IMG/VR virus record: IMGVR_UViG_3300017963_000188
Span: 1-64,000 of that record
Reading direction: 5' to 3' (one strand)
Length of the DNA stretch: 64,000 nt
This document shows, one piece after another, positions 2,188-58,054 of the stretch (position 1 is the first letter of the stretch; the number at the start of each line of letters is the position of its first letter). The notes beneath the pieces were generated by a model. That model was not told the origin of the DNA. It worked only from the letters and a program-made list of their open reading frames with translations, and did not search any database. A program made the position numbers and the translations under genes.

Positions 2188-2475
2188 TTGACAGGACGTA
2201 TGAAGATATTTATAGAAAATAGGGGATTGAACATGAGTTCTATAGAACTTAGAAAACTTTCATTCAAAATAGCACAGGATGAAATTCAAGCTCCAGACCC
2301 AAAAGTCAAGAAAGAAGTGAATAAATACTACAAAGAATGTCGTGCCGATGGTGGTTCACAAGAGTATTGTGCCCGTGTTGCATGGCAAATCTATTGTGAA
2401 AATGTCAATCCCGACTATGAGGGTTGCACTGAATTTGGTGAAACTGAAAAGACCGTTGGTCCTCTCAACAAATGA
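2188..2475 (+). CDS. hypothetical protein carrying the ELRKLSFKIA motif (start probably MSSIE at 2233)
   Basis: ORF with a Cys-rich C-terminus; AGGGG RBS before 2233. Confidence 0.6.
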   Translation: MTGRMKIFIENRGLNMSSIELRKLSFKIAQDEIQAPDPKVKKEVNKYYKECRADGGSQEYCARVAWQIYCENVNPDYEGCTEFGETEKTVGPLNK

Positions 2476-3110
2476 CGGAGTTTGTAATGCCCAGTTCAAA
2501 TCTATGTGAGTTAGGTAGGAAAATTAGTATATCGGTGGGAGATACATCACAAGGTGGTTTGAAACTTACCAAAACATTGGCTATTCGATTTGGTAAAGAA
2601 GCTCAGAATTCAATGGAGACTCATTTCACATTAAATGGGCCTGATGACTCTAATTTTCATGTTGAGAAAAAAGGAAATAGTTATTCTGTAGGTGCTTTTG
2701 CTGAAGGTGTCCCAGGAGAAATGTGGATTGGTGGGGAAGATAATGCTCTGGTGGAAAGAGAAACTCAACAAGAAGCTAGTTGGCAGGGAATTGAAGAAGG
2801 CACTGAGGAATGGAATGATTTATATGAAGAGATTGAACGACGTATTTATCGTCCAGCCAATGAAGCTGAAATCAACATAGAAATGACCCTTGAACAAGGG
2901 GAATACACAGAACATATCGAAGATGATGAGTCCAATATTGTTGGTGAGGAAAAAATCCCATATGTACACCTGACATACGAACTCTTCTCTAAATATGGTT
3001 ATGATGATGGGAAGTCTCGGGGGTGGTATGAGGAATGGCTTTGGACAGAACAAGAAGTCAAAAATGCCATCTCAGATATGAAACGTCATATTGAATACAT
3101 GACAATATAG
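2472..3110 (+). CDS. hypothetical acidic protein
   Basis: 212-aa ORF overlapping the upstream stop. Confidence 0.7.
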   Translation: MTEFVMPSSNLCELGRKISISVGDTSQGGLKLTKTLAIRFGKEAQNSMETHFTLNGPDDSNFHVEKKGNSYSVGAFAEGVPGEMWIGGEDNALVERETQQEASWQGIEEGTEEWNDLYEEIERRIYRPANEAEINIEMTLEQGEYTEHIEDDESNIVGEEKIPYVHLTYELFSKYGYDDGKSRGWYEEWLWTEQEVKNAISDMKRHIEYMTI

Positions 3111-3148
3111 AAATAGCAGTAAAACTCGTCACAAAAAGGAAGAAACCC

Positions 3149-4021
3149 ATGGATCTCAATGAAATTTCAGGATATGAATCGGGCTCAACAGAGATTTGGT
3201 ATTATAAACCAGGACAGAGCCGTGACTTAGGGATGGGTTCAGAATGGATGCTGAAGAAAATGCCCAAAGCCATGCCTGACCCCAACAATTTGAAGAAGAC
3301 ACATACTCTTCTGGGTACTCTCAAGGAAACCAATCTCAACAAGATCTATGAGATGTTGCAGGGTATGTTTTGGAGTCCAAACGGTGAGGCTCGTGAACTT
3401 ATCAATGACTTAGACCTTGATCACACATCAATGAGTGTGGGAGATATCATCAAGACTCCATCAAGAACGGTGATGGTTGATGGTTATGGTGACCATGGTT
3501 TCTATGACCTTACCAACAAAAAAGGTGTAGAGAGCACACTAATCCAGACCATAGATAGGATAGCTAAAAAAGCAAACAAAGCTGAATTTGAACGGCACTT
3601 GGAACAGAACCCTGTGGTAGGTCAAGAATTTGCTGATTCAGTTATGGTTTACAGTGAGAAAGATCTCGATGATCCTATTTGGGTATCTTTTGCCTGGTAT
3701 GGTCATGGGCATCAATCGGTACATTGTATCGGAATCAGTGAGTATGGTCCTGATTCAGCTATTGAAGCTGCATTTGATACGGCTGAACAAGAGACTTTTG
3801 CAGACATGATCCGGGAAGCTGAAGAAGAGTATTATCAGGACTTCATTGAAGAAGGTATGTCTGAAGAAGATGCTCGTGAAAAAGCATATGAATGGTCACA
3901 GGAACCATTAGATGGCATGGTCTATGAGCTAACCAAAGGTGAGTTTGGAGAAGTAGCTGAAAAGTCCAAGAGCATGCAAGGTAATGACCTCTCAAAACTC
4001 TACGATGAAGATATCGACTAA
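3149..4021 (+). CDS. YodL-like domain plus acidic domain joined by an IDRIAKKANKA linker
   Basis: HTSMSVGDII...VMVDGYG resembles the YodL HSLSVSDVV..YVDSFGF motif; C-terminal half is very D/E-rich. Confidence 0.55.
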   Translation: MDLNEISGYESGSTEIWYYKPGQSRDLGMGSEWMLKKMPKAMPDPNNLKKTHTLLGTLKETNLNKIYEMLQGMFWSPNGEARELINDLDLDHTSMSVGDIIKTPSRTVMVDGYGDHGFYDLTNKKGVESTLIQTIDRIAKKANKAEFERHLEQNPVVGQEFADSVMVYSEKDLDDPIWVSFAWYGHGHQSVHCIGISEYGPDSAIEAAFDTAEQETFADMIREAEEEYYQDFIEEGMSEEDAREKAYEWSQEPLDGMVYELTKGEFGEVAEKSKSMQGNDLSKLYDEDID

Positions 4022-4032
4022 TCCCTACCAAC

Positions 4033-4061
4033 TTTAAAAAATCGATTATCTCCGGTATAGA
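4033..4061 (+). promoter_or_regulatory. phage promoter TTTAAA-N17-TATAGA
   Basis: exact consensus upstream of the RNA ligase gene. Confidence 0.8.
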
Positions 4062-4120
4062 TCTTTAGGAGGAGGTGGAGATCCACCAAGTCCAGTAGGA
4101 TCTGAAATTGGAGGTAGTAG

Positions 4121-5242
4121 ATGAATCCATATAACATTCCATTTAATGAATTGTATCAAGGATTACTTGCTGAGGTTGAAAAGGGGTGGATTCGTAAAGT
4201 AGATGACCCTGAAGGTCCATTAGAGCTATATAACTACACAGAAGACTGTCAAGAACAACGAGTATGGAATCCCTCAACAATCGTTGCAAGGGGTCTTGTA
4301 CTTGATCCAATCAAGAAGAAGGTTGTAGCTCACCCCTTCCCAAAATTCTTCAATCTGGGGGAACCTGAGGCTGCTGAGATACACCACCCCATCAAGGTAA
4401 CAGAGAAGATGGATGGGTCTTTGGTAATAGCTTTCTGGGATGAATATCAAAATAAGTTCAGAACCGTGACCAGAGGTTCATTCACAAGTCCAGCAGCTCT
4501 ATCAGCTCAAGATATGTTACCTCAGAACCTGAACAAAGATTACACATATCTGCTTGAGTTGATTGGTCCTGATAATTGGGTTGTGGTGAAATATCCTGAT
4601 GATCGTCTCATTCTTCTCACTATCTACGATCAAATAGGTCATGAGTTGAATTGGCCTGATGTTCTTTTATGGGGTAGGAGGATGGGTGTTGATGTCGTTC
4701 AGACTCATGTTTTCGATACTGTTGGGGAGACATTGCAATATGCTCAAACTCTCCCAAATGACCGTGAAGGATTTGTAATACGTGATAGATATGGAAGTAG
4801 GGTAAAAGTAAAGGGTCCAGAGTATCTGAAGCTCCATAAATTCTTGTCTAGAATCACACCTAAGAATGTGTGGAGGTGGATGAGGCATGGTGAGGGGGTA
4901 GATCCAGAACGAATCCCTGACGAATTTTTGCCTGACTTCAAAGAACTCCAACGAATGTTTGAAGAGAAGTTTGAAGAAGTGTTGGGGCAGGTGGGTTTGT
5001 TGAAGGGAAAGGTATATCAGTTCTCTCGAAAAGAACTAGCACTGACTCTTAATGGAGGGAAATGGCCTCGTGGTTCAGAAGTTACGAGGTTTGAGAAGAA
5101 GTTTGCCTTCCACTGTTTTGATCTAGATTTCCCAGAGAAGGCTCGTACCATAGGGTCCAAACAACGTCGTAACGTGTTTGATGAGTTTGAGCCAAAAGGG
5201 AAACATCTCGATGGATTTGAACCACTCAATTCAATGATCTAA
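4121..5242 (+). CDS. T4 Rnl1-like RNA ligase
   Basis: ARGLV, PFPKFFN, TEKMDGSL (motif I, adenylated Lys), EGFVI (motif IV), RVKVKGPEY (motif V). Confidence 0.9.
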   Translation: MNPYNIPFNELYQGLLAEVEKGWIRKVDDPEGPLELYNYTEDCQEQRVWNPSTIVARGLVLDPIKKKVVAHPFPKFFNLGEPEAAEIHHPIKVTEKMDGSLVIAFWDEYQNKFRTVTRGSFTSPAALSAQDMLPQNLNKDYTYLLELIGPDNWVVVKYPDDRLILLTIYDQIGHELNWPDVLLWGRRMGVDVVQTHVFDTVGETLQYAQTLPNDREGFVIRDRYGSRVKVKGPEYLKLHKFLSRITPKNVWRWMRHGEGVDPERIPDEFLPDFKELQRMFEEKFEEVLGQVGLLKGKVYQFSRKELALTLNGGKWPRGSEVTRFEKKFAFHCFDLDFPEKARTIGSKQRRNVFDEFEPKGKHLDGFEPLNSMI

Positions 5243-6007: not shown

Positions 6008-6020
6008 TCCTTTTTTCCTC

Positions 6021-6049
6021 TTTAAAAAAATAAATCTCTTCAGTATAGA
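6021..6049 (+). promoter_or_regulatory. phage promoter TTTAAA-N17-TATAGA
   Basis: exact consensus followed by AGGAGG and the ORF at 6060. Confidence 0.8.
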
Positions 6050-17542: not shown

Positions 17543-18547
17543 ATGACAATGTATAGATATTCAAGATCATGGTTTGAGGTTGGTGATTATATAAAGCAAG
17601 AGCTACGTGACATGACAACTTGGGCTCTTGTCATTGGTAAGCTAAAGAATGGTGCAGAGAAGGTCATAGCCGTTGATTCTGATCGAGGAATACCTGCTAT
17701 CAGATCTACCAGTGGGTGGTATCCAAGTCCTGTTAGGATCGATGAATCTGAAATCCCTGAAAAGTTCCTAAAGAAGATTTTGAAGAAAAAGAATCAGGTT
17801 GGTGCTTCCAAACAAGCTAAAGATGTGACCTTCCCTGAGATGTGGAACAAGGTCAAGAAGGTATATGATCAGACCCAGAAGCAGATAGAAATGCTTCCTT
17901 GGCTTGGTGATGTGGAACTTATGGCAGCAGGTAGAGATGAATACTATACTGAGGATGTTAAAGAAATATATGATGAGATGATTAAGTATGAGGAAATACT
18001 AGAAGATTTCCTTGCAAGATATAAGGGATATCGTCCCGCTCACAAACAAAGCTCTGCCCTCAGAAAAATTGCTCAGGACATTGTAGTTAAAGAAGGTCTT
18101 TTCTTTGGTCCAAAGTTCAAAGAGAAAGGTATTAATCAAGTAGCTGGTGTATATAAAAAAGACCTCAAGAATTTCATTGAGAAGGAAATCCCTAAGAAAT
18201 ACCACCTCCCAGACCTAGCTGCTAATGTCTCTATTGATATAACCCCACATCCAGAATTCCTCATGTTCACTGTCAATGCAGAGGTATGGGATGAAGTGGG
18301 GAACAATAAGATCAGTGACATCACCATCAAAGCTGAAGGGGAAATAGACATTAGTGGGAAAGGTGAACTCGATATTTCCATGGTGGGTGCATACAGGCAT
18401 GAAACGATAGACACCAAAACAAAGAAAGAAGAGTTCAGCTTTGTGCCTGGAAAAGATGCTACTGATGCTGCACTGAAGGCTCTGGTAAAGAAAATAAAGA
18501 ATGTCCTTACCTGGGAAGGTGAGGGACTCTTTGCTATGTTTGACTAG
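17543..18547 (+). CDS. MYRY-leader multi-segment protein with internal KQA and LRKIA linkers
   Basis: MTMYRYSRSW; VGASKQA; KQSSALRKIAQD. Confidence 0.75.
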   Translation: MTMYRYSRSWFEVGDYIKQELRDMTTWALVIGKLKNGAEKVIAVDSDRGIPAIRSTSGWYPSPVRIDESEIPEKFLKKILKKKNQVGASKQAKDVTFPEMWNKVKKVYDQTQKQIEMLPWLGDVELMAAGRDEYYTEDVKEIYDEMIKYEEILEDFLARYKGYRPAHKQSSALRKIAQDIVVKEGLFFGPKFKEKGINQVAGVYKKDLKNFIEKEIPKKYHLPDLAANVSIDITPHPEFLMFTVNAEVWDEVGNNKISDITIKAEGEIDISGKGELDISMVGAYRHETIDTKTKKEEFSFVPGKDATDAALKALVKKIKNVLTWEGEGLFAMFD

Positions 18548-21512: not shown

Positions 21513-21776
21513 ATGCTTTCAAAACAACTCTATGATATATCAAGAAAAATAGCAGCAAAAGATGTATATGTATGGACCTTCTATGAATGTGAGCATGGAG
21601 GGGATATGGATATGTATGCTGCTGATGTAACTAGTTCAGGTGGTGAGATCTTAGACCAGAAGCTCAATGATGATGAATGTGTCATGAAAGTAAAAGTGAA
21701 AGACTGGGATTCATTTATAGAAAGATTCAAAAACACAGAGACATTTGAATTCTGTAGTCTTTCAGATTTTGTTTAG
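21513..21776 (+). CDS. hypothetical acidic protein with an LYDISRKIAA leader
   Basis: ORF in operon. Confidence 0.65.
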   Translation: MLSKQLYDISRKIAAKDVYVWTFYECEHGGDMDMYAADVTSSGGEILDQKLNDDECVMKVKVKDWDSFIERFKNTETFEFCSLSDFV

Positions 21777-27147: not shown

Positions 27148-27474
27148 ATGTACCGATATTCCAAGAGAGCTGACTATTTAACTCAAAAACATCCTGAACT
27201 AAGAAAGGGAAACACCATGTACCGTTATAGACAAGCCCGTAGAGTTAGAGCTGCCTCCTTATTAGAGATGCAGCGTGAATACAATCGTGGATTGTCTGAC
27301 CTCGAAAATGGGTATGCTGTCATGATGAAGTTGGCAGATACCTATGCTGCTGAATCTCAATATGTGAATCACCAAGCCCTCGATACTCTCAGAGAAGTGC
27401 TGGCTGACCTCCATGACCTGGTAAATGTCAACCTGAGAACTATTCAGACTCAACTTTGGGAGGATGCAAATTAA
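27148..27474 (+). CDS. MYRY-leader protein with two tandem leaders
   Basis: MYRYSKRA at 27148 and MYRYRQARRVRA at 27217. Confidence 0.75.
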   Translation: MYRYSKRADYLTQKHPELRKGNTMYRYRQARRVRAASLLEMQREYNRGLSDLENGYAVMMKLADTYAAESQYVNHQALDTLREVLADLHDLVNVNLRTIQTQLWEDAN

Positions 27475-27668: not shown

Positions 27669-27911
27669 ATGTACCGATACCGTAAAGCCCGAAGGGTGAG
27701 AGCCATGGGTATATTGCCTGATGAGATACTTGTTCGTTTGGATCAGCTAGAGAAAGATGCCAAGACGTTACAGAAGCAATACCAAGTCTTGGCAAATGAC
27801 ATGGCAATGAACCCACAGGTTGACCCTGAAGATGTTGATGACTTTATAGATGTAGTCAATGCTGTGAACGACCTCGTATATGATATCCAGAAGTATCGGA
27901 GAGGTTACTAA
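27669..27911 (+). CDS. MYRY-leader small acidic protein
   Basis: AGGAG RBS; MYRYRKARRVRA. Confidence 0.75.
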   Translation: MYRYRKARRVRAMGILPDEILVRLDQLEKDAKTLQKQYQVLANDMAMNPQVDPEDVDDFIDVVNAVNDLVYDIQKYRRGY

Positions 27912-27981: not shown

Positions 27982-28368
27982 ATGAGACTAACAGCCAAAG
28001 ATTTGAGTCCTGAGACAGTGGACCTCATCCAAACAGCTAATGGTGATCCAGAGGTGGTGAAGTTACGTAAGGAACTGACCCTCTACAAAAAGAATGATCC
28101 AGGTCTGGCTATGATGAGAAGTAAGGTCACTACTTCCATTATGAAGTTCAATGAAGATTTGGGGAGAGCTTTGGATAAGTATAAAAGATTCCCTTCAGAC
28201 TCTGTTCTTGAAAAGTTAATTGACAAGAACTGGAAAAGAGCTGGGGTGGTTGATGACTTTGAAGGGATGTTCAAGGATTACTGCTTAGGTGTTATAGCTA
28301 AGGTGAAGAGTCTCAAGTCTACAGTGTCTGGTAAACTCAGAGCCCTTGCATCACAAATCTGTAAATGA
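27982..28368 (+). CDS. hypothetical protein ending in KLRALASQI
   Basis: GGAG RBS. Confidence 0.65.
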   Translation: MRLTAKDLSPETVDLIQTANGDPEVVKLRKELTLYKKNDPGLAMMRSKVTTSIMKFNEDLGRALDKYKRFPSDSVLEKLIDKNWKRAGVVDDFEGMFKDYCLGVIAKVKSLKSTVSGKLRALASQICK

Positions 28369-30492: not shown

Positions 30493-31359
30493 ATGCATGT
30501 CAATGAGTTGATACCAGATATTGAGAGTGCTATTCGGTCCATATGGCCTGATGCCTTCTTAGATGTGAATTTCACCGTTGGGATATATCCCACAATTAAC
30601 ATCTATTTTGCCATTGGTTCTGACAAGTCTCAGTGGAGCAATGGTATCATTCACAATGATCCTGGACATCACAGGCTCACTATTGGTGGGGTGGATAGGT
30701 ATGGGATAACAGAAGGTGGTGAGATTGAGGGTGATGTTGAGCTTATACGACAATTGGGTGGTGGTATTTCAGATAAGAGCTTCTCAACTCAGAAGGTGCC
30801 GTTCCGTAAGAAGAAGGTAAGTCCTGACAAGGTAAAGACATTGGTTCCTGCCATCAAGACTTACTTTGAAAGATTGAAGAAGAAGTATGATGAGATGGTA
30901 GCTGCTGGAACAGTGAAGGTTCCAGGAACACAGGCATCAATACTCAGAACTCTAGCAGCTAAGATTGCTAATGAGCCTATGGGGTGGGAACCAGAAGATG
31001 ATCCTGATGTGCAGTGGATGGCTCAGGACGATATTGGTCAAATAGAGCAAGACAAAAAGGCTATAAAGAAAGATATGCTCAAGATAAATGGTGCTTTGAG
31101 ACGGTTGATTATCTCTTTACCTTTTGTAGAGATGAAGGGAAGGGATTTATATCTAACCAATGAAGCTGATATCGATGATTTGTATGACCTGACTGAACAA
31201 GTAGCCAAAACCATTGATGACACGACTGAGACGGGGGTGTGGGGTTATTGGTCTTGGGATGAGGGGCATACATCAGAGATGGACCACTTTGATATGTCTC
31301 GTTCGGATGCTGAAGCCATGATGAAGGCTGATGGGTTTAGATGGGTTTTAATGGCATAG
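30493..31359 (+). CDS. two-segment protein with an internal ILRTLAAKIANE linker
   Basis: AGGAG RBS; acidic C-terminal half. Confidence 0.75.
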   Translation: MHVNELIPDIESAIRSIWPDAFLDVNFTVGIYPTINIYFAIGSDKSQWSNGIIHNDPGHHRLTIGGVDRYGITEGGEIEGDVELIRQLGGGISDKSFSTQKVPFRKKKVSPDKVKTLVPAIKTYFERLKKKYDEMVAAGTVKVPGTQASILRTLAAKIANEPMGWEPEDDPDVQWMAQDDIGQIEQDKKAIKKDMLKINGALRRLIISLPFVEMKGRDLYLTNEADIDDLYDLTEQVAKTIDDTTETGVWGYWSWDEGHTSEMDHFDMSRSDAEAMMKADGFRWVLMA

Positions 31360-31368: not shown

Positions 31369-31659
31369 ATGCTATCACAACACTTGAGAAGATTGGCTAG
31401 GAAAATTACTAGGTTACATGACCATGATGCTAAGTTCCAAGACCGTAGAGTCTGGGATATGGTCAATAGAGCTGTAGATGAAGCACAGAGAAAGGACCAG
31501 GAGCTAGATGCTTGGATAGGTCCTAGCTGGTCAGGGGAGGACATGATTTATCTGGTTCCGACTGGTCAGCATTCACCAGGTACACAGCCATTGAATGTGA
31601 CTTTGACTCCTGATATGACTCGTGAACAGATGAAGACACAACTCTTCTCAGTTGTTTAG
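31369..31659 (+). CDS. protein with an LRRLARKI leader
   Basis: AGGAG RBS. Confidence 0.7.
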   Translation: MLSQHLRRLARKITRLHDHDAKFQDRRVWDMVNRAVDEAQRKDQELDAWIGPSWSGEDMIYLVPTGQHSPGTQPLNVTLTPDMTREQMKTQLFSVV

Positions 31660-36903: not shown

Positions 36904-37320
36904 TTAGAGTGAAGACCCGTTTTTATCCAACCACTTGTTGAACGCTTCATCGAAGATGCCCCAGGCTCGTACCTCGTCCCAGTGTTTTGATTGTCCATGA
37001 ATCATTCCTATGATCCAATATTTGAAGTTACCCTGGGATTGTATGGCACGACGAACCTTCAAACACATTTGACGTGCCGTTTCAGGATAGACCTGTGGTG
37101 ATAAGGTTTGAGCTATCTTTCTAAAGGTCCACCCCTGCATTCTCAGCTTAAAGGCTTCCCAATGTCTAGGATTTAACCCCCTCACCACTCCATAGTAGCA
37201 AACTATCTCTACGAAGTATTCCCACTCTGCTGTTACAACAATAGGATCTGATTGATGTTTTGATGGATGGTGCTTGATTGGTTTGAGTCGTTTAGCTAAT
37301 CTTTCGTATCGGTATTTCAT
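36904..37320 (-). CDS. sigma70 region-4-like HTH protein
   Basis: LNPRHWEAFKLRMQGWTFRKIAQTL..ETARQMCLKVRRAI. Confidence 0.55.
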   Translation of the reverse strand: MKYRYERLAKRLKPIKHHPSKHQSDPIVVTAEWEYFVEIVCYYGVVRGLNPRHWEAFKLRMQGWTFRKIAQTLSPQVYPETARQMCLKVRRAIQSQGNFKYWIIGMIHGQSKHWDEVRAWGIFDEAFNKWLDKNGSSL

Positions 37321-40713: not shown

Positions 40714-41877
40714 ATGAGCTTCGAATCTATAGTTTCAAGAGTAGTACACAGATCCAGTGATAAGTATGAGTTCTTAGAAGGCAATCCTGAACTCACTTTC
40801 AAAGTTGGTACAGATTGGATTCCTGATTTAGAATATCCAATGGATGACCAAGACCTGGCAGACCTAATACAAGACATGATTTACGAAGATTGTAAAGCTA
40901 TGGGTGGGGACATCTCAAAGAGTGAAGTGGATGTAGATAAGGTAGGTTTTGGTGGTGGTGACAAGACATGGAAAAGCACTACCTTTACAGCCATTGTCAC
41001 AGTAGGACCCTTCGAAGGAAAAGTCTATGGGAAAGGTACTGGACTAGTTGAAGAGTATGATGCTTGGATTCGTCCAGAGAGTTTCAGCATTATGTTTGGT
41101 GGAAGAGGAGAAAAGGAAAGCTCCAATAAAGAAGGTTCCAAAGAAAGCTCGAATAAAGAAGGTTGGCTCAAGAAATTCATCGTATTACTCAAGAACATCA
41201 ATCTTGGTGACTATAGAACCATGACCGATGAAGATTGGGATTGGATCATTGATGCCTATCGTCCCGAAGCTGATCATTTTGAGTATTTTCTCAGATTAAA
41301 TGAAAATCGCACCTTTGACAAAGAGAATGATCTCAATTCCCTGGTCATTGAGGCTAACAACATCTTATCAGAACTTGAAGCTCAACTCTTGAAGATGCAA
41401 CGAGATGTGGATACCCCTGAACTGAATCAAACCTTGGATCTGATTCATGAGCTTCAGAAGACAAAAACATCAGCTCTTGAAGGACTCAAGGTCACAGACT
41501 ATGGTTTCTTTGAAGCTCCCCCAGATGATCTAGATCCTGACTTTGCTATGACTGCTGAAGTTACATTTTCAGTATCTGGACCTCTGCTAGCAAAACTTCT
41601 GGGTCGTCAACAGAGAATGGTTGAGAGAGTCTTGAAGGAACTCAAACCTGACAAGGCTATTAGACAACTCCATGATGGGCCTGCCTCTGATACTATCCTG
41701 AAGGCTTTGAAACGCTATGTTGACCGATCTGTCTATGATATGGGTCAGGAAGAATATGATCGAGACGCATACATGGAACGATATGATTGGGGCAATACTG
41801 AATATTGGGAAGCTAGGATTGGCCCCAATTCAATTACCTACCGAGTCGAGTTGGATGTGTTGGGTGAGTGGGACTAA
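40714..41877 (+). CDS. acidic multi-segment protein with a duplicated KESSNKEG linker
   Basis: leader SFESIVSRVVHRSS; 24-bp near-duplication around 41113-41165. Confidence 0.75.
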   Translation: MSFESIVSRVVHRSSDKYEFLEGNPELTFKVGTDWIPDLEYPMDDQDLADLIQDMIYEDCKAMGGDISKSEVDVDKVGFGGGDKTWKSTTFTAIVTVGPFEGKVYGKGTGLVEEYDAWIRPESFSIMFGGRGEKESSNKEGSKESSNKEGWLKKFIVLLKNINLGDYRTMTDEDWDWIIDAYRPEADHFEYFLRLNENRTFDKENDLNSLVIEANNILSELEAQLLKMQRDVDTPELNQTLDLIHELQKTKTSALEGLKVTDYGFFEAPPDDLDPDFAMTAEVTFSVSGPLLAKLLGRQQRMVERVLKELKPDKAIRQLHDGPASDTILKALKRYVDRSVYDMGQEEYDRDAYMERYDWGNTEYWEARIGPNSITYRVELDVLGEWD

Positions 41878-42125
41878 ATAGGGTACATATCACTGTACCA
41901 GCGATCAATCTCATCAAAGAGTTCTTTGTCAGCTTTATCATATTCTTTTTTGATCTTCAGAAATGCTTCAGCCAAGGTACGTAATTTGGAGCTTGGATCA
42001 AGTTCTTTTACAGCTATTTCTGCAATCCCTGCAATAGTGGTATCCACTTTATTATCATGGATCATTTCCATAAGCTCTGTTTCAGTCATTGCTCTGACTT
42101 TACGTGCTCTTTTATATCTATACAT
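41874..42125 (-). CDS. MYRY-leader small protein
   Basis: MYRYKRARKVRA. Confidence 0.75.
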   Translation of the reverse strand: MYRYKRARKVRAMTETELMEMIHDNKVDTTIAGIAEIAVKELDPSSKLRTLAEAFLKIKKEYDKADKELFDEIDRWYSDMYPI

Positions 42126-42127
42126 GC

Positions 42128-42670
42128 CTACACCCTCTCTTGAAGGTCCTTGATTACTTCTTCCAGAATATATTGAGCTTTGTAGGGCATTTCTGATTCA
42201 ATACCAGGGGCAACTTTGTTGATCTCTTTAGCCACACTATCAGCAATCCTTATTGCTACTTCATCAAGCTCTGGGTATTCACCAGCTCTCACCTTCCTGG
42301 ATCTCCGTGATCTTTTCCCTACATACTTCTGTAGATCTTTGTATCGTTGCTCAGTTCCTGCTTCACCACCACTCTCTTCCCACTCTTCAGGAGTTCCACC
42401 CCACCTTGGATCAAGACCTGGGTGAGTCACTACTCCATTAGCCAGTTCCATTTTCTCCATCTTACCAAACTGGTCAGAATCGAGATCATAGATACGTTTG
42501 ATTTTAGTGGGCTTATTATTATACATCACTTCATCACCCACATAGTAGGTTTTGTCACCCACTTGCATTTTATCCTTATTCACTTCTTCTCTGGCTGTCT
42601 TCTGGGATCTTGCCACAACCCTATCTGCCATTTTTCTATACATGCTTGAAGACATCACTGATTTTTCCAT
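42128..42670 (-). CDS. two-segment protein with KTA and RSRKVRA linkers
   Basis: MYRKMADRVVARSQKTA; KRSRRSRKVRA. Confidence 0.75.
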   Translation of the reverse strand: MEKSVMSSSMYRKMADRVVARSQKTAREEVNKDKMQVGDKTYYVGDEVMYNNKPTKIKRIYDLDSDQFGKMEKMELANGVVTHPGLDPRWGGTPEEWEESGGEAGTEQRYKDLQKYVGKRSRRSRKVRAGEYPELDEVAIRIADSVAKEINKVAPGIESEMPYKAQYILEEVIKDLQERV

Positions 42671-42679
42671 GTCAATCTC

Positions 42680-43009
42680 CTACAATCTGATTGTACTATC
42701 TGCAATTGGTTTGTTATTGATAAGAGCCGTGACTTCTGGGACGTTTACTTCTAGAACAATCTCACTTGGATCTATATCATGATCATCTAGATAATCAAAG
42801 ATGATAGGTTCAAGATTATCTATAGCAAACAGGAATCTGCCCAAAGAGAAGTCATATCCTGCATCCATAAGTTCTTCGTGAATTTCTATGAGCACATCAT
42901 CTTGGAACATGCCATATTCGTCCATGATACCATCGAATTCTGGCATTATTTTTTTTGCTAATCTCCTCAAATAAGAAACTGTTTTGAAGTTTGCTGCTAA
43001 TCGAAACAT
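42680..43009 (-). CDS. acidic protein with an LRRLAKKI leader
   Basis: GAGG RBS. Confidence 0.7.
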   Translation of the reverse strand: MFRLAANFKTVSYLRRLAKKIMPEFDGIMDEYGMFQDDVLIEIHEELMDAGYDFSLGRFLFAIDNLEPIIFDYLDDHDIDPSEIVLEVNVPEVTALINNKPIADSTIRL

Positions 43010-43020
43010 GATTTTGACCT

Positions 43021-43293
43021 CTACAAACCACTGTCTTTGATTTCTTGGTTTGTTTCCTGTAATCTTTTATTTAGAAAGGTCATTACCTCAAGGAACCGAT
43101 TAAGTTGTTTGACCCTTGATGGATCGTCAAAGGAAAATCGATCAGGTTTAGAATCAACAATCTCATCAATAAGACGTTTTGTTTCTTGGCTTAGTTCTAG
43201 ATGTTTTTCAGTCTGATTTCTGAGTTTTCTGAGAGGTGTTACTTCGTCTACATGTCTCTCAAGTAAACCAGCTCTTTTTGGATATCGGTACAT
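43021..43293 (-). CDS. MYRY-leader small protein
   Basis: MYRYPKRA. Confidence 0.75.
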   Translation of the reverse strand: MYRYPKRAGLLERHVDEVTPLRKLRNQTEKHLELSQETKRLIDEIVDSKPDRFSFDDPSRVKQLNRFLEVMTFLNKRLQETNQEIKDSGL

Positions 43294-43296
43294 ATC

Positions 43297-43488
43297 TTAC
43301 CTCTTTCGTTCCAGCTTAGCATGGAGTTCTTCAATCTTTAACCATAGTCTCCAAATCACATACCCTTCAATGACCATGATTGCGTATGGACCTCCAACCT
43401 TCAGAAATTCAAGCACCTTTTGTGCTGTTGTCAATGTGGCATCGATCATATCTGACCTTTTACAGATAAACTTTCCCGTCATCCCCAA
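43297..43488 (-). CDS. small single-TM protein (holin-like)
   Basis: GGPYAIMVIEGYVIW followed by a charged tail; start probably MIDAT. Confidence 0.45.
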   Translation of the reverse strand: MGMTGKFICKRSDMIDATLTTAQKVLEFLKVGGPYAIMVIEGYVIWRLWLKIEELHAKLERKR

Positions 43489-44950
43489 TATATGGGTCTA
43501 CCCCACCAAAGGTGTGACTGATATCGGTGAGAACTTTCCCTACTTCTTCAGTGTAATCTGAGCTATCCCAGAATCCTGCCCCATGACCATTTCTAGTAAG
43601 CCAGAAATTATGTCCAAGGCTCACACTATCCATTTCATCTACAGCTTCTTTCCCAAGCTTTTCCTCAGCCAAAGAAATGAAACCTTCAATGTCTTCACGG
43701 CTTTCTTTCAGAGCTTCATCTGAGAAATCACTAATATCAACCAGGTCATCCATTGGAGTCCCTGAATTATCATCTTCATCTTCAAAATGGACACTGGACC
43801 ACAGAGCTGTCTCTAGATATGAATCGAGAAGGTCATCTTCCCAGTTTGCTTGTTTTGCACCCATAGAAGATTCTTTCATATCTTCTTTTATTTCTTGCTT
43901 TCTTTCATAGACATGTTCTGCAATCTCATGCCAATTGATTTCTCTCAGGCTTGCATTGAGGATATCAGAGTAAGGTCCACTTGGAAGATCTGGAGCATTC
44001 TCTTCAGCATCGTTTTGAAGCATCCTAGCAATGTCTCCCTCACTCATATCTTCATCAAGAGCTGTTTCTGCATAGCCATTGATCTCATCACCCTGGTCCA
44101 TCCACAGAGCCCAGTTCCAAGTCTCATAGTTGGTCCATCCATTGTACTCTGCTGTTTTTGAACTCTTAACTACCTTGTCTGAATATTCTTTTTCAAGACT
44201 TTCAGTATCCCACTGATCATCAACTAATGCTTGGGCTTGAGGAGAATCCTCTACAACCTCTGCATCAATAGAGTAGTCTGGCCATTGTCCTCCCTGTAAA
44301 GGAGAATCTACAACCACTCTCCCACCATCTTCCATGATAATTTCAAATACTTCATGTAATTCAAACTGATCTTCATAATAACCACGTTCATCGAAATCAT
44401 CACGATCCCATTCACTGATAGGATGTCCAATTTCATCACCGTGATCTTCAAGTATTTCCCAATCACTACGAGTTACATACCAATTTCTCATCTTATTGAA
44501 GAGTTCTTCACTGATGTCTTCATAGTTACCAGCGATGTTAAGTTCATGATATGTTTCAATTTTCTTGATTGGATGGTTTGCTGCTTTCTTATTTGCTGCT
44601 ATATCAAACATAGTGCTCACCTCGAAAAGTGTTATTTCAACTTCTTTCCCCATATCTATAATAGAGATATCTTTCCCCAAACCTTGTTTACCAATATCCA
44701 TACCAGCTCTTTCGGCTTGCTTTTTAGCTACCTCTTCAAACTTAGCTGAAAGAACTTTGTTGGGGAATTTATATTTGAGTTCAAAGTCATCGAAAATCTC
44801 AAACTCTGAAGGCTGACCAGATGTTCTCACACCCTTATACTTTTTAGCTATTCGATCAAGTTCAGAAATGAAAGTGTCCATTTCCATAGCTTTTTTGCTA
44901 TTAGCACTTTTTCTGCCAGACCACTTATTTGACCAATTGTATCTATACAT
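43460..44950 (-). CDS. MYRY-leader acidic polyprotein-like protein (about 4 segments)
   Basis: linkers KSANSKKA, IAANKKAA, KSSKTA and GAKQA; segments YNGWTNYETWNWALW and GHNFWLTRNGHGAGFWD. Confidence 0.8.
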   Translation of the reverse strand: MYRYNWSNKWSGRKSANSKKAMEMDTFISELDRIAKKYKGVRTSGQPSEFEIFDDFELKYKFPNKVLSAKFEEVAKKQAERAGMDIGKQGLGKDISIIDMGKEVEITLFEVSTMFDIAANKKAANHPIKKIETYHELNIAGNYEDISEELFNKMRNWYVTRSDWEILEDHGDEIGHPISEWDRDDFDERGYYEDQFELHEVFEIIMEDGGRVVVDSPLQGGQWPDYSIDAEVVEDSPQAQALVDDQWDTESLEKEYSDKVVKSSKTAEYNGWTNYETWNWALWMDQGDEINGYAETALDEDMSEGDIARMLQNDAEENAPDLPSGPYSDILNASLREINWHEIAEHVYERKQEIKEDMKESSMGAKQANWEDDLLDSYLETALWSSVHFEDEDDNSGTPMDDLVDISDFSDEALKESREDIEGFISLAEEKLGKEAVDEMDSVSLGHNFWLTRNGHGAGFWDSSDYTEEVGKVLTDISHTFGGVDPYIGDDGKVYL

Positions 44951-45042: not shown

Positions 45043-45339
45043 ATGGACATTATTGATAAGGTAGCAGAACGAGTCACGGCAGACGATGGTGAAGCAGCGG
45101 TTGAAGATGCATTTTTCTATGAGATGTATCAGAAATTCATTCGACAAGAACTCGATAAATTCTTTAAGAATCTAGATCAAACTCTCCTTAAGATCCAACA
45201 TGGTGAGTGGCCACCTAAGATGGAATATAAGGTGATGAGATACAAACCTATGGGTATGACCGACCAAGAGTTCAGAGAACATCTTGTCGATGAATATCTG
45301 AGTTGGAAGCATGAAGTTCAGGGATTGATAAGGGAATAA
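45043..45339 (+). CDS. protein with an IIDKVAERVTA leader
   Basis: AGGAG RBS. Confidence 0.7.
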   Translation: MDIIDKVAERVTADDGEAAVEDAFFYEMYQKFIRQELDKFFKNLDQTLLKIQHGEWPPKMEYKVMRYKPMGMTDQEFREHLVDEYLSWKHEVQGLIRE

Positions 45340-45624: not shown

Positions 45625-45837
45625 ATGACTCGTCATAAAGATCTCCAAGAACTCTATGATTTGGCTACCAGTGTCTCATGGGGCATGAGCCACAGTTCTG
45701 CTAGTGTAGGTCAGGTTTGTGTCAGATGTCATAAACCAAAAGGTGAGTTCACCACTGAGAAGGCTCATAGAGAATATGGTATTTCAGGTCTCTGCGAGTC
45801 TTGTCAAAACGAAGTATTCAAACCACCAGAGGAATGA
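45625..45837 (+). CDS. zinc-finger protein
   Basis: CVRC..EYGISGLCESCQ. Confidence 0.7.
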   Translation: MTRHKDLQELYDLATSVSWGMSHSSASVGQVCVRCHKPKGEFTTEKAHREYGISGLCESCQNEVFKPPEE

Positions 45838-45838
45838 G

Positions 45839-46018
45839 ATGGAAGACAAAGACAAGCAGGAGCAGAGAGCTGAAGAAAGTGAGTACAAAGGCAATCCTAT
45901 GATTACTCTCCACCCCTATGGGAATCATGGTTTCAGCTTTGGGTACAAGAAGGCATGTCTTATCGTAGATTTAATAGATGACATCAAGGCTTTTGTGGAT
46001 CGTCACAAGGAACAGTGA
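45839..46018 (+). CDS. small conserved protein (possibly PC4-like fold)
   Basis: SEYKGNPMITL..FSFGYKKACLIVDLIDDIKAFV. Confidence 0.55.
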   Translation: MEDKDKQEQRAEESEYKGNPMITLHPYGNHGFSFGYKKACLIVDLIDDIKAFVDRHKEQ

Positions 46019-50573: not shown

Positions 50574-50854
50574 CACTCTTCTCCGATACATCGTTCAATC
50601 AACTCTACCCAATAATGGTCAAAGTCATGGTCGTCCCAGCCCTCACACTCTTTCTGACCACGCATGAAGTTTCGGATCTGCATACCTTCTCGGAAATGAA
50701 CTGGATGAGGAAGCCCACTTTCATTCCAGACAGCATTGACACAACCATAGTCTTTTTTCACACCTATGAAGAAAGCTATTCCGATAGGACCCAAAAACTG
50801 TTTGGTCTTCTCAACCAGACTATCCGGTATTACCTTTCGATTTTCCATCCCCAA
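50573..50854 (-). CDS. hypothetical protein
   Basis: HPVHFREGMQIRNFMR. Confidence 0.65.
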   Translation of the reverse strand: MGMENRKVIPDSLVEKTKQFLGPIGIAFFIGVKKDYGCVNAVWNESGLPHPVHFREGMQIRNFMRGQKECEGWDDHDFDHYWVELIERCIGEE

Positions 50855-55021: not shown

Positions 55022-55052
55022 GTGGTATAATGAGAAAAGGAGGTATTATGTA

Positions 55053-55490: not shown

Positions 55491-55549
55491 ATTCCCTTTT
55501 GATTTTTAATATAATTTATGCCATTCTGTCTTTAAGGTAGGAGGGTATT

Positions 55550-56508: not shown

Positions 56509-56547
56509 TCTCAACAGATCCAGTATATATTACTGAAGGTGGTTGAG

Positions 56548-56814
56548 ATGAAATGTTTGAGATGTGGATACTGCTGTACCAAATATGCTGTCATAATTGT
56601 AGATGATCCTGAGAAAGGTCCAGTAGAAGATAATCTCAAACCTCATCTTGGGGATGGTCCTTGCCAACATCTTGAAGGGGAAAAGCCAGGGAAGTATCAT
56701 TGCAGGATACATCATTACCCGTGGTACAAAGAGACTCCCTGTTTTGAACATACTCAAATTGGTAAGGATGATGAACCTTGTCGTATCGGCCAATGGGTAT
56801 TAAGTCGTCCCTAG
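56548..56814 (+). CDS. YkgJ-like CxxCxxCC Fe-S/Zn cluster protein
   Basis: CLRCGYCC..CQHL..CRIH..PC..C. Confidence 0.7.
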   Translation: MKCLRCGYCCTKYAVIIVDDPEKGPVEDNLKPHLGDGPCQHLEGEKPGKYHCRIHHYPWYKETPCFEHTQIGKDDEPCRIGQWVLSRP

Positions 56815-56899
56815 CTAATCTGATCTATATGTTCTTGCCATATCAAGACCTCCTGTCTATAATACTAATTGTTTTGTTTTTTCTATATCTTGAGGATTA

Positions 56900-57283
56900 G
56901 TGATGAGAATAGATATAGCAAAAGTGTTTATTTTGTTTGGGGTGGATATCCGGGTCGAAATGAGCCGGTGCAAATCCTTCCCTGAAGCTGTGAAGATGCT
57001 TGAAAATTGTAAAAAGAAAGCCAAGGTTGGCTATAAGAAACTTGCCTTTGAGCATCATCCTGACCGAGGTGGTGACGAAGATAAGATAAAAGAACTGAAT
57101 GCACTATTTGATTTAATAGAGAAGATTCAGGTACAACCTCCACGACCAAGACCAATTGTCATTCATTTTGGTAATTTTGGTGGATGGTCAAGTTCATCTA
57201 CTACCACAACATCTACATTCACTGGTGGTGGTACAAATATCCACTATACAAACTCTGGGACAGGAACTACTGGTGGTTTTTAA
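56900..57283 (+). CDS. J-domain (DnaJ-like) protein
   Basis: KVGYKKLAFEHHPDRGGDEDKIKELN (HPD motif); S/T/G-rich tail. Confidence 0.88.
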   Translation: MMRIDIAKVFILFGVDIRVEMSRCKSFPEAVKMLENCKKKAKVGYKKLAFEHHPDRGGDEDKIKELNALFDLIEKIQVQPPRPRPIVIHFGNFGGWSSSSTTTTSTFTGGGTNIHYTNSGTGTTGGF

Positions 57284-57285
57284 TA

Positions 57286-57753
57286 ATGGTTTATTTTTAT
57301 TATGAAAAGGAAGATAGAGGTCAAGACTTCAAAGGTCTAGATCAAGATTATTTTGATGATGATGACAAGAAGATGGAAGTAGGCCCAATGGTGGAGCCAT
57401 CATCAGAATTTGATCTCAATGAAATCATCAATGACCTACCACCTCTATATTTTTGGAGATCAGGGAGAATTGCTATGAAACCGGAAGAATTGTTAATCTG
57501 GGCAAAAGGATTTGATGCAACTATTAAGATGGGTCCCTCTCCTCGTTCTGATGCTGATTTTTTCATGGACTTCAGAGAAGGTGAGGAAGAGTTGGGTGCT
57601 ATCGTAAGTCAAATAAAAGATAAGGCTAAAAGAGAAGGGTATCGACTAGTCGATTCCTATTCCTCTAAATCTCTAGGTCTTAACCGAGTGGTGTTAGTGT
57701 ATCGAGATGAAAGAAGAGAACGGGCAGCAGTCCAAGAAGTTCTCAATAAGTAA
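57286..57753 (+). CDS. hypothetical protein
   Basis: probable start MVYFY immediately after the J-domain gene. Confidence 0.6.
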   Translation: MVYFYYEKEDRGQDFKGLDQDYFDDDDKKMEVGPMVEPSSEFDLNEIINDLPPLYFWRSGRIAMKPEELLIWAKGFDATIKMGPSPRSDADFFMDFREGEEELGAIVSQIKDKAKREGYRLVDSYSSKSLGLNRVVLVYRDERRERAAVQEVLNK

Positions 57754-57796
57754 TTTATATATCTAAAAGTATAGAACTTAACCTTTGGAGGATAAA

Positions 57797-58054
57797 ATGG
57801 TTTCCAACGAATTAAGGAAGATTGCAGAGAATATGACCAAAGAAGCAGTGAGCTGGACTAAAGGGCATTTCCAAGCCGTGGCTGATATTATAGAAAAAGT
57901 AGAAGCTACTAAAACAGTGAAGTCTGCTTTGGCTTTGATGTTTGTAAGTTACTTTGAAGCTTCAAATAAGAGCTTCAGACCTGAACAGTTTATTCGAGCC
58001 TGTGGTCTCCCTGTCTCAATTCTAAAAGACAAGGGAGAAGCTGTAGAAGAATAA
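57797..58054 (+). CDS. protein with an ELRKIAENMTKEA leader
   Basis: GGAGG RBS. Confidence 0.7.
   Translation: MVSNELRKIAENMTKEAVSWTKGHFQAVADIIEKVEATKTVKSALALMFVSYFEASNKSFRPEQFIRACGLPVSILKDKGEAVEE

What the first reader, a model, noticed from the sequence alone, without database searches (positions are those of the whole stretch)
2233..58054. LR(K/R)(I/L)A..KxA linkers suggest protease-processed cargo polyproteins
Seen: an amphipathic basic motif occurs N-terminally (2233 ELRKLSFKIA, 21513 LYDISRKIAA, 31369 HLRRLARKI, 43009 YLRRLAKKI, 45043 IIDKVAERVTA, 57797 ELRKIAENMTKEA, 40714 IVSRVVHRSS). It also occurs internally between acidic segments (3149 IDRIAKKANKA, 17543 SKQA and ALRKIAQD, 30493 ILRTLAAKIA, 44950 LDRIAKK/KKAA/KTA/KQA, 40714 KESSNKEG duplicated) and C-terminally (27982 KLRALASQI). 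In 43460-44950 the KxA sites separate segments that I recall as stand-alone phage proteins (GWTNYETW; GHxFWLTRNGHGAGFWD). Inference: modular polyproteins that load several effectors into the head and release them by cleavage after KxA/G.
Basis: partly seen in the sequence, partly recalled or inferred. Interest (0 to 1): 0.7.

Follow-up and report, generated by a model that had tools for sequence, protein, structure and literature searches.

The report
Shared peptide tags on huge-phage proteins
A 358-kb uncultured phage puts the same short basic helix ("address tag") on the ends, or between the modules, of dozens of otherwise unrelated small proteins; this most likely marks them for loading into the phage head and possibly for cutting, but neither step is shown.

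Summary
The window is the first 64 kb of a complete 358,038-bp metagenomic jumbo phage.

**The tag.** L[RK][RK][IL]A occurs 9 times against 1.0 expected. The full consensus, S-x-x-L-R-K-[IL]-A-x-x-I, sits at residues 3-20 in 10 of 14 carriers (p = 5e-8). It is encoded by varied codons and attached to proteins that are otherwise unrelated.

**A wider system.** This tag is one of several families, together with MYRY and an RVAxRYL-like type. A 398-kb relative (G003) carries about 45 tagged proteins. One tag domain has 670 cluster representatives in public metagenomes and no Pfam family.

**The KxA claim.** Generic KxA is near chance (z = 2.2). A specific linker, [NSAG][SKAN]K.A, occurs 6 times in the 496-aa ORF against 0.18 expected. 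Two of these sites sit exactly where modules begin that are stand-alone genes in other phages (DUF7249, phrog_1915).

**Head loading and cleavage.** The evidence is circumstantial. The tag core recurs in four consecutive head-assembly proteins, including the prohead protease, scaffold and capsid N-arm. In G003, KTA[AS] marks the capsid N-arm, the scaffold and the junctions before internal tags. The complex prediction gave no answer, and no virion data exist.

**Verdict.** This looks like a new variant of capsid-targeting and polyvalent-protein systems.

The parts
2239..2280 (+). N-terminal tag A (SIELRKLSFKIAQD, residues 3-16) of the 80-aa ORF 2233-2475. The true start is the ATG at 2233.
   Evidence: PSSM score 28-30. 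Ribosome-binding site and ATG. Coordinates.
3548..3583 (+). Internal tag (TIDRIAKKANKA, residues 134-145) at the start of the C-terminal module of ORF 3149-4021.
   Evidence: Residues 131-272 match the stand-alone tagged paralogue 344320-344844 from its residue 3 (E = 5e-23). Coordinates.
17549..18547 (+). 332-aa ORF with an N-terminal MYRY tag (17549-17572), an ASKQAK linker (17804-17821) and an internal tag A (SSALRKIAQDIVVK, 18050-18091).
   Evidence: (the Atlas gene call starts at MYRY).
21519..21560 (+). Weaker N-terminal tag A variant (SKQLYDISRKIAAK) of the 87-aa ORF 21513-21776.
   Evidence: PSSM score 16.6, the first hit after the 12 seeds.
27148..27252 (+). Two MYRY tags in tandem (residues 1-8 and 24-35; the second keeps its Met) in ORF 27148-27474.
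27669..27704 (+). MYRY tag (MYRYRKARRVRA) of the 80-aa ORF 27669-27911.
28330..28365 (+). C-terminal tag-like peptide (GKLRALASQICK) of ORF 27982-28368. This is a weak member.
   Evidence: Seen. It is below the PSSM listing threshold.
30934..30975 (+). Internal tag A (ASILRTLAAKIANE, residues 148-161) of the 288-aa ORF 30493-31359.
   Evidence: PSSM score 16.2 as a non-seed hit; it was then added to the seeds of the matrix.
31375..31416 (+). N-terminal tag A (SQHLRRLARKITRL) of the 96-aa ORFan 31369-31659.
   Evidence: The only database match among 5.8 billion sequences is the protein itself.
37285..37317 (-). Hybrid MYRY/tag N-terminus (KYRYERLAKRL) of ORF 36904-37320.
40726..40758 (+). N-terminal RVAxRYL-type (F1-like) tag (SIVSRVVHRSS) of the 387-aa ORF 40714-41877. 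Its linker at 41113-41163 is a 27-bp tandem duplication.
   Evidence: (F1 family).
41874..43293 (-). Four consecutive tagged genes. ORF 41874-42125 has MYRY at 42090-42125 and SSKLRTLAEAFLKI at 41952-41993. ORF 42128-42670 has the F1-like tag MADRVVARSQKTAR at 42590-42631. ORF 42680-43009 has tag A at 42938-42979. ORF 43021-43293 has MYRY at 43261-43293 and TPLRKLRNQ at 43213-43239.
43460..44950 (-). 496-aa multi-module protein. It has MYRY (44921-44950) and the tag ISELDRIAKKYKGV (44828-44869). Its K-x-A linkers lie at residues 17, 75, 119/120 (44573-44596), 263 (44144-44164) and 364 (43841-43861). DUF7249 covers residues 267-359 (43874-44152) and the phrog_1915 module covers residues 373-495 (43466-43834).
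45046..45081 (+). N-terminal F1-like tag (DIIDKVAERVTA) of the 98-aa ORF 45043-45339.
   Evidence: It clusters with the tag A N-termini in the unbiased all-against-all comparison.
45746..45787 (+). Weak tag A variant (SSPLRRLIENMVFQ, residues 10-23) of ORF 45719-46018.
   Evidence: PSSM score 12.6.
57803..57844 (+). N-terminal tag A (SNELRKIAENMTKE) of the 85-aa ORF 57797-58054.
59992..60033 (-). Weaker N-terminal tag A variant (SDQLRIISAKILRQ) of the 85-aa ORF 59785-60042.
   Evidence: PSSM score 14.1.

Best explanation
The motif is a short, basic, amphipathic helix that serves as a transferable 'address tag'. It is fused to the N-terminus of many otherwise unrelated accessory proteins of this huge phage. 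Less often it sits at the C-terminus or between modules. It belongs to a set of tag families (tag A/F3, RVAxRYL-type F1, MYRY/F4 and others) shared across a clade of 300-450-kb environmental phages.

Most likely mechanism (inferred, not shown): the tags dock their carriers onto the head-assembly machinery, that is the scaffold, the inner capsid surface or the prohead protease. The carriers are thereby enclosed in the prohead. This resembles the T4 capsid-targeting sequence on internal proteins, or cargo fused to the basic C-terminal helix of the P22 scaffold. The prohead protease (211503-213008) then trims the carriers at [KR]-x-A-type sites, including the repeated [S/N/A]-K-x-A linkers between modules. 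The separate, mostly acidic modules would then enter the host with the DNA as early host-takeover or anti-defence factors.

Shown: the tags and linkers exist, they are selected at the peptide level, they mark module starts, and they are clade-wide. Inferred: what they bind, whether they are cut, and whether the carriers are packaged.
For: 1. Unrelated ORFan bodies share a conserved N-terminal peptide. This is the signature of the T4 internal-protein locus (my own knowledge; reviews found).
2. The system is clade-wide and combinatorial. G003 has tag families of 17-24, 9, 8, 7 and 5 proteins, with 102 similar pairs of N-termini against 17-29 in controls. The F3 domain has 670 cluster representatives, nearly all at residues 1-45, with unrelated bodies and no Pfam family. 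Tandem and mixed tags occur.
3. Tags and linkers mark module boundaries.
4. Carriers include a polyvalent-type LPD1 + topoisomerase-IB protein and a CCA-adding/HD enzyme in G003. Polyvalent proteins are predicted to be packaged and processed (PMC5512222).
5. There is a link to the head. The tight tag core hits four consecutive head-module proteins: 210394-210903, the protease at residue 288, the scaffold at residue 119 and the capsid N-arm at residue 25. That is 4 hits in 5,029 aa against 14 in 110,187 aa overall, with none in the 105-205 kb block.
6. The protease carries a conserved hydrophobic-x-[KR]-[AVI]-A-[RS]-x-hydrophobic peptide just after its catalytic domain in 36 relatives. In the window's lineage it reads LRRVASRI, close to the window's tags.
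7. In G003, KTA is enriched (62 against 33, z = 5.8). KTA[AS] lies in the capsid N-arm, in a conserved scaffold site and directly before internal tags.
Against: - There is no direct evidence of packaging or cleavage.
- Carrier genes lie in the accessory arms (2-102 kb and 318-357 kb), not in the structural module. Three of them sit behind a bipartite promoter type that is almost absent from 205-317 kb.
- No late promoter could be defined, so timing is unknown.
- No conserved cleavage residue follows the N-terminal tags.
- The head-protein matches rest on a regular expression chosen after seeing the data. With the PSSM, the capsid N-arm ranks 16th and the protease 51st of 103,310 positions, which is suggestive only.
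- G003's capsid N-terminus does not score with G003's F1 PSSM.
- KTA is not enriched in the window's own genome.
- About 10% of a proteome being head cargo is a large share.
- The complex prediction of a tag peptide with protease, capsid protein and scaffold gave no answer.
Confidence: 0.4

Rival explanations
1. The tags are docking peptides for a hub that has nothing to do with the capsid. Candidates are a phage or host protein that gathers early effectors, a chaperone (the phage encodes a GroEL-like protein), a replication or transcription factory, or an unfoldase/protease for which terminal tags act as timed degrons.
For: - Carriers lie in accessory arms next to RNA-repair, Bro-N and HTH genes. 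Some sit behind the promoter type missing from the structural module.
- The tags are mostly at protein termini, as degrons and short docking motifs are.
- Tag flavour is lineage-specific, as expected if it co-evolves with a variable partner.
- Tandem tags suggest avidity.
Against: - No candidate hub was identified.
- This reading does not explain why the tag core and KTA[AS] recur in the capsid protein, scaffold and protease.
- It does not explain the repeated K-x-A linkers at module starts.
- Internal tags would be useless as terminal degrons unless the protein is processed.
Confidence: 0.3
2. The tags are membrane- or nucleic-acid-binding amphipathic basic helices. They would act like the MinD/FtsA membrane-targeting sequences or arginine-rich RNA-binding peptides, localising carriers to the membrane or to DNA/RNA rather than to a protein partner.
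For: - The hydrophobic moment is high (0.68 against 0.29) and the helix has a basic face.
- The tags are terminal.
- The MYRY tags are arginine-rich.
Against: The conservation is sequence-specific (invariant small Ala, a Ser N-cap, fixed spacing). Several distinct families are each tightly conserved across lineages. Compositional membrane anchors do not usually look like this. No carrier has other membrane features.
Confidence: 0.1
3. The tags have no biochemical role of their own. They would be inherited joints left by module shuffling and gene fusion among accessory genes, and the linker motif would be a by-product of local K/A/S-rich composition.
For: - Internal copies sometimes keep a Met (27217 in the window; P0053, P0059 and P0103). 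This is the trace expected of gene fusion.
- The accessory arms turn over fast. Carriers have no homologues even in relatives with 82% identical capsid proteins.
Against: - Codons are scrambled while the residues are kept, so there is purifying selection on the peptide.
- The tag is better conserved than the body between paralogues.
- 670 clusters keep the F3 tag while the mean column identity of the full alignment is 8%.
- The linker count beats shuffles of the protein's own composition.
Confidence: 0.12

Closest known systems
T4 capsid-targeting sequence (CTS) on internal proteins IPI-III and the hypervariable internal-protein locus of T-even phages
   Same: A short conserved N-terminal peptide is shared by otherwise unrelated small proteins. 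In T4 it directs them into the prohead core, and the prohead protease then removes it. The cargo includes anti-restriction factors.
   Different: - Here there are at least three to five distinct tag families per clade.
- Tags also occur internally, in tandem and at C-termini.
- Dozens of carriers are scattered over the accessory arms rather than three in one locus.
- The tag is basic and amphipathic, with no L/I-x-E site.
- Packaging and cleavage are unproven.
Polyvalent proteins of phages and conjugative elements (Iyer, Burroughs, Anand, de Souza, Aravind 2017; PMC5512222) and the P1 Dar system
   Same: Several effector modules lie in one polypeptide. They are predicted or known to travel with the DNA and to be proteolytically processed. 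A tagged LPD1 + topoisomerase-IB protein occurs in relative G003.
   Different: - The window's proteins carry no LPD or embedded peptidase domain.
- Most are single-module.
- The defining feature here, a shared tag plus a K-x-A linker, is not part of the polyvalent-protein description.
Cargo-loading peptides of encapsulins, encapsulation peptides of bacterial microcompartments, and the C-terminal helix-turn-helix of the P22 scaffold used to load cargo
   Same: Short terminal amphipathic helices, joined by loose linkers and sometimes duplicated, are enough to load unrelated cargo into a protein shell. Encapsulin shells have the HK97 capsid fold.
   Different: These systems are not known in infectious tailed-phage heads in this form. 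The sequences are unrelated, and there are multiple tag families.
Herpesvirus assemblin cleavage sites ((V/L/I)-x-A|S and Y-V/L-K/Q-A|S)
   Same: They have Ala at P1, Ser or Ala at P1' and a nearby Lys. This resembles SKTA|S, KVA|S and KLA|AS in the scaffold, capsid N-arm and cargo linkers. Many phage prohead proteases are thought to share the assemblin fold (my own knowledge).
   Different: The fold of this phage's protease could not be verified: the catalytic-domain model has pLDDT below 50 and there is no PDB or Pfam hit. The cleavage specificity is purely inferred.

Membership tests
T4-type capsid-targeting sequence / internal head proteins | A short conserved N-terminal peptide shared by otherwise unrelated proteins | tested here: met
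   10 of 14 tag A sites lie in the first 20 residues (p = 5e-8). The bodies are unrelated by BLASTP.
T4-type capsid-targeting sequence / internal head proteins | A defined prohead-protease cleavage site at the end of the tag | tested here: inconclusive
   No conserved residue follows the N-terminal tags. All tag families do contain [KR]-x-A. That tripeptide is 1.5-fold enriched in the first 20 residues (62/373 against about 41/373).
T4-type capsid-targeting sequence / internal head proteins | Carriers are present in virions and are ejected | not testable with these tools
   The phage is an uncultured metagenomic record. No RNA or proteome data exist. The cultured relatives phage G and Tunturi_5 lack the F1 tag.
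T4-type capsid-targeting sequence / internal head proteins | Co-expression with head genes (late transcription) | tested here: inconclusive
   Carriers lie outside the structural module. Three sit behind a promoter type nearly absent from 205-317 kb. No late promoter could be defined.
Polyvalent proteins (PMC5512222) | Two or more independent effector-type domains in one polypeptide | tested here: met
   The 496-aa ORF has DUF7249 (267-359) and phrog_1915 (373-495). Each is stand-alone in other phages.
Polyvalent proteins (PMC5512222) | Signature LPD domains or an embedded processing peptidase | tested here: not met
   No LPD or peptidase domain appeared in the 30 window proteins scanned with Pfam. 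LPD1 occurs only in a tagged protein of relative G003.
Protease-processed polyprotein | A repeated short motif at the boundaries between modules | tested here: met
   [NSAG][SKAN]K.A occurs 6 times in the 496-aa ORF against 0.18 expected (p = 4e-8). The sites at residues 263 and 364 abut the two boundaries that could be mapped.
Protease-processed polyprotein | Cleavage products observed | not testable with these tools
   No proteomic data exist. The structure and complex predictions were uninformative.
Pfam DUF7249 | A match above the curated gathering score | tested here: met
   30.7 bits against a cut-off of 27, over residues 267-359.
Membrane-targeting amphipathic helix (MinD/FtsA type) | A terminal amphipathic helix defined by composition rather than by sequence | tested here: not met
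   The amphipathic character is met (hydrophobic moment 0.68). However, the conservation is position-specific (Ser, Leu, Arg, Ala and Ile columns).

The most novel reading that the evidence does not exclude
Huge environmental phages may use a combinatorial peptide 'postcode'. Several families of 10-45-residue tags, alone, in tandem or between modules, would route about 5-10% of the proteome into the prohead or another phage-built compartment. The prohead protease would release modules at [KR]-x-A sites. If so, the repertoire of injected effectors of an uncultured phage could be read directly from its sequence.
Probability: 0.3. Interest if true: 0.85.

Novelty: new variant of a known kind. Interest (0 to 1): 0.68.

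Why it matters
Which proteins a phage injects with its DNA is known for only a handful of model phages, and it has to be found by virion proteomics. If these tags are loading signals, they would mark the ejected effector set of a whole clade of uncultured 300-450-kb phages. The window's genome has about 25-30 such proteins and a relative has about 45. One tag domain alone has 670 protein clusters in public data.

That would point directly at candidate anti-defence and host-takeover proteins among ORFans. It would also offer small natural tags for loading foreign cargo into large capsids.

Even if the partner is not the capsid, the result stands on its own: a set of conserved, transferable peptides on a tenth of a proteome is an undescribed layer of organisation in phage accessory genes. 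No Pfam family covers it, and the literature searches found nothing.

Tried and rejected
- **DNA-level repeat or promoter artefact: rejected.** Codons vary and every start has its own ribosome-binding site.
- **Hidden paralogy of carriers:** BLASTP finds no similarity beyond the tag, apart from 3149/344320.
- **Homologues of carriers:** the 31369 ORF matches only itself among 5.8 billion proteins. The 17543 and 43460 ORFs are absent from five relatives and from IMG/VR. A strict back-translated MLSxxL++[IL]A+xI pattern found only the same phage in another sample.
- **Capsid N-terminus as a mimic of the F1 tag:** not supported by the PSSM.
- **Late-promoter discovery:** no clear motif emerged, so temporal class is unresolved.
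- **Complex prediction:** protease 1-275 + capsid protein + scaffold + tag peptide gave score 0.00, 'no answer'. The job ran once that row was dropped.
- **AlphaFold2:** the 496-aa protein gave pLDDT 38.7. The protease gave pLDDT 45.7, with only the C-terminal helical domain confident. Neither is usable for domain or fold calls.
- **Other searches with no result:** the ESM Atlas look-up of the 17543 ORF gave no lead. PDB and Pfam searches of the protease gave nothing. No RNA sequencing runs hold the phage.
- **Papain-like peptidase:** one sits next to tagged genes in an unrelated contig, but it is not conserved in this clade.
- **Plasmid context of the DUF7249/phrog_1915 modules:** only 8 weak hits.
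- **Literature:** nothing on LRKIA-type tags or N-terminal targeting in jumbo phages.

Full report
**Setting.** The window is bases 1-64,000 of a single 358,038-bp IMG/VR virus record rated 100% complete. It carries no tRNA genes and is about 41% G+C.
- The genome has a structural block at about 205-317 kb. It holds a prohead protease (211503-213008; phrog_18299, E = 6e-11), an acidic low-complexity scaffold-like protein (213019-214116), a decoration protein and an HK97-type major capsid protein (214801-215676; phrog_2522, E = 5e-51).
- The capsid protein is 81-93% identical to those of hundreds of environmental contigs, including complete 380-450-kb genomes. It is 46% identical to that of Tunturiibacter phage Tunturi_5 and 38% to that of Bacillus phage G.
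- The same DNA is held by sediment and seawater metagenomes. No RNA run holds it.
- The window itself is an accessory arm of mostly small ORFan genes. It also holds an Rnl1-like RNA ligase, a deoxyribosyltransferase-like/phosphoesterase fusion, two Bro-N proteins, a multi-HTH protein and a radical-SAM enzyme.

**The motif is real.**
- On a crude 529-ORF proteome of the whole genome, L[RK][RK][IL]A occurs 9 times against 1.03 in within-protein shuffles (z = 8.1). A longer form occurs 12 times against 1.65. One strict match is the universal GroEL peptide in the phage chaperonin and is irrelevant.
- A PSSM recovers 12 strong sites with consensus S-x-x-L-R-[KR]-[IL]-A-x-x-I, plus a few weaker ones.
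- Ten of the 14 best start within residues 3-14 (binomial p = 4.6e-8). Three or four are internal and one is at the C-terminus of a small HAD-like phosphatase.
- The conserved residues are written with all six Leu codons and five Ser codons. Identical residues share a codon in only 33% of pairs. Each N-terminal copy has its own ribosome-binding site. Selection therefore acts on the peptide.
- The peptide is strongly amphipathic as a helix: hydrophobic moment 0.68, against 0.29 for the proteome and 0.50 for its 90th percentile.
- Outside the tag the carriers are unrelated. Where tested, they are ORFans.

**It is one of several tags, and the system is clade-wide.**
- A second N-terminal peptide, MYRY followed by basic residues and Ala, heads about ten proteins. 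YRY occurs in the first 8 residues 10 times against 0.17 expected, again with varied codons. It co-occurs with tag A in several proteins, and five consecutive genes at 41874-44950 are all tagged.
- I fetched a complete relative, G003 (398 kb; capsid protein 83% identical), and compared all N-terminal 24-mers without any prior pattern. G003 has 102 high-scoring pairs against 17-29 in interior or shuffled controls.
- These pairs fall into families:
  - F1, R[VI][AV]xR[YF]L: 19 seed proteins plus about 5 further PSSM hits.
  - F2, MNPRKAFEEAL: 9 proteins.
  - F3, a roughly 45-residue two-helix domain ending in L-A-S-x-L-[RK]-x-L-A-x-R-V: 8 proteins. Its second helix is the window's tag A.
  - F4, MYSYDHR: 7 proteins. 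This is the counterpart of MYRY.
  - F5, MDHxRWKxA: 5 proteins.
The G003 F1 matrix also finds further F1 tags in the window's genome, including 42128-42670.
- Tag usage is lineage-specific. The strict F1 pattern occurs 14 times in G003, 5 in G002, 4 in G004, once in this genome and never in phage G or Tunturi_5. Controls give 0-2. The tag A pattern occurs 8 times here against 0-3 in relatives. G002 has few tags overall.
- A profile of the F3 domain finds 670 cluster representatives (321 at E ≤ 1e-10) among 1.84 billion proteins. The match is almost always at residues 1-45 of proteins 45-280 aa long. Their bodies do not align (mean column identity 8%). No Pfam family covers the tag.
- In an unrelated metagenomic contig, two adjacent genes start with F3, one gene combines half an F3 with an F4 tag, and another ends in a C-terminal F1 tag.

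**Modules and linkers.**
- The 496-aa ORF contains DUF7249 at residues 267-359 and a phrog_1915 module at 373-495. In about 170 other phages the matching segments are separate small genes.
- The 128-aa ESCO13 protein aligns from its residue 7 to residue 372 of the ORF. The module therefore starts at about residue 366, inside the GAKQA linker. The ESCO13 protein itself has no such peptide. DUF7249 starts right after SSKTA.
- The linker pattern [NSAG][SKAN]K.A occurs six times in this one protein (residues 17, 75, 119/120, 263, 364). The proteome rate predicts 0.18 (p = 4e-8) and shuffles of its own composition give 0.14.
- By contrast, bare KxA is near chance genome-wide (z = 2.2).
- ORF 3149-4021 is an N-terminal domain joined to a tag-plus-module unit that also exists as a stand-alone tagged paralogue (E = 5e-23). 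The tag is better conserved than the body.
- In G003, a 955-aa LPD1 + topoisomerase-IB protein has F1 tags at residue 4 and at residue 690, between LPD1 (620-685) and the topoisomerase domain (729-930). Other multi-module proteins repeat the pattern, with KTA[AS] directly before the internal tag.

**Is there a link to the head?** The evidence is circumstantial.
1. The tight tag core [KR][ILV]A[KRSA].[IM] has 14 hits in the proteome. Seven are in tag-bearing proteins. Four lie in four consecutive head-morphogenesis proteins: 210394-210903, the protease at residue 288, the scaffold at 119 and the capsid N-arm at 25. None lies in the 105-205 kb block. The density in the head module is 8 per 10,000 residues, against 1.3 overall. 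I chose this expression after seeing the data. With the unbiased PSSM, the capsid N-arm ranks 16th and the protease 51st of 103,310 positions.
2. In 36 relatives the protease carries a conserved hydrophobic-x-[KR]-[AVI]-A-[RS]-x-hydrophobic peptide just after its catalytic domain. A low-complexity linker and a confidently folded helical C-terminal domain follow. In the window's lineage this peptide reads LRRVASRI.
3. In G003, KTA is enriched (62 against 33, z = 5.8). KTA[AS] occurs in the invariant capsid N-arm, in a scaffold site conserved across most relatives and before internal tags. It is not enriched in the window's genome, where the corresponding scaffold stretch reads RKSKAD-IRKKA.
4. 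Capsid N-arms and scaffolds are classic substrates of prohead proteases. Ala at P1 with Ser or Ala at P1' recalls assemblin sites. Both statements are my own knowledge.

**Evidence against, or missing.**
- Carrier genes sit in the accessory arms. A bipartite promoter-like motif, TTTAAAAA-N17-(c)AGTATAGA, heads many operons there, including three tagged genes. It is nearly absent from the structural block: 15 of 17 full sites lie in the arms.
- I could not define a late promoter, so timing is open.
- The complex prediction gave no answer, and the single-sequence models were unusable.
- No cultured relative with these tags was found.
- The literature describes T4 capsid-targeting sequences and polyvalent proteins. 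The library held nothing resembling this tag system.

**Conclusion.**
Modularity and linker/boundary coincidence hold. Head loading and cleavage remain a reasoned hypothesis, which I put at about 0.4.
- The rivals are a non-capsid docking hub (about 0.3), a generic membrane or nucleic-acid anchor (about 0.1) and a functionless shuffling scar (about 0.1).
- I classify it as a new variant of capsid-targeting and polyvalent-protein systems, pending experiment.

Noticed in passing
window 17549, 27148 (twice), 27669, 37317(-), 42125(-), 43293(-), 44950(-); also genome 65200, 97224(-), 102143(-): A second conserved N-terminal peptide, MYRY followed by basic residues and Ala, heads about ten unrelated proteins (10 against 0.17 expected). 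In ORF 27148-27474 it occurs twice in tandem, and the second copy keeps its Met.
   Followed up: partly
window 2120-2157, 4024-4061, 6012-6049, 32808(-), 39233(-), 55000(-), 63605(-) and others: A bipartite promoter-like motif, TTTAAAAA-N~17-(c)AGTATAGA(at), lies about 25 nt upstream of many start codons in 1-105 kb and 317-358 kb. It is almost absent from the structural block at 205-317 kb.
   Followed up: partly
window 41113-41163: An imperfect 27-bp tandem duplication (24 of 27 nt identical) encodes KESSNKEGS twice in a linker of ORF 40714-41877. It was too short for Tandem Repeats Finder to report.
   Followed up: yes
window 4121-5242, 13469-14494, 25815-26855, 38281-39207(-), 37370-38233(-), 49740-50591(-): Recognisable genes among the ORFans: a T4 Rnl1-like RNA ligase, a nucleoside 2-deoxyribosyltransferase-like + metallophosphoesterase fusion, two Bro-N proteins, a protein with several sigma-r4/Myb-like HTH units, and a radical-SAM enzyme.
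   Followed up: no
L141 1639-6816 (ENA metagenome contig): An unrelated high-GC contig has two adjacent F3-tagged genes, a gene with half an F3 tag followed by an F4 tag, and a gene ending in a C-terminal F1 tag. A papain-like peptidase gene lies directly upstream and a Lar restriction-alleviation gene is nearby. The peptidase is not conserved in the window's clade.
   Followed up: partly
genome 210394-211493, against G003 311503-314202: The portal-adjacent head gene is one 899-aa ORF in relative G003. In this genome only a 163-aa ORF (210394-210903) resembles its N-terminus, and an unrelated-looking 196-aa ORF follows (210903-211493).
   Followed up: no
genome 176183-177751(-), 327441-329123, 345495-347507: The phage encodes a GroEL-like chaperonin, a Ro60/TROVE-like RNA-binding protein (phrog_850) and an NAD-dependent DNA ligase.
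   Followed up: no
genome 213019-214116 (scaffold-like protein): The acidic middle part of the protein holds a peptide beginning GEAAPA three times in a row. The C-terminal peptide LS.LW.S.PDV.DVF is conserved across the clade and may be the capsid-binding end.
   Followed up: no
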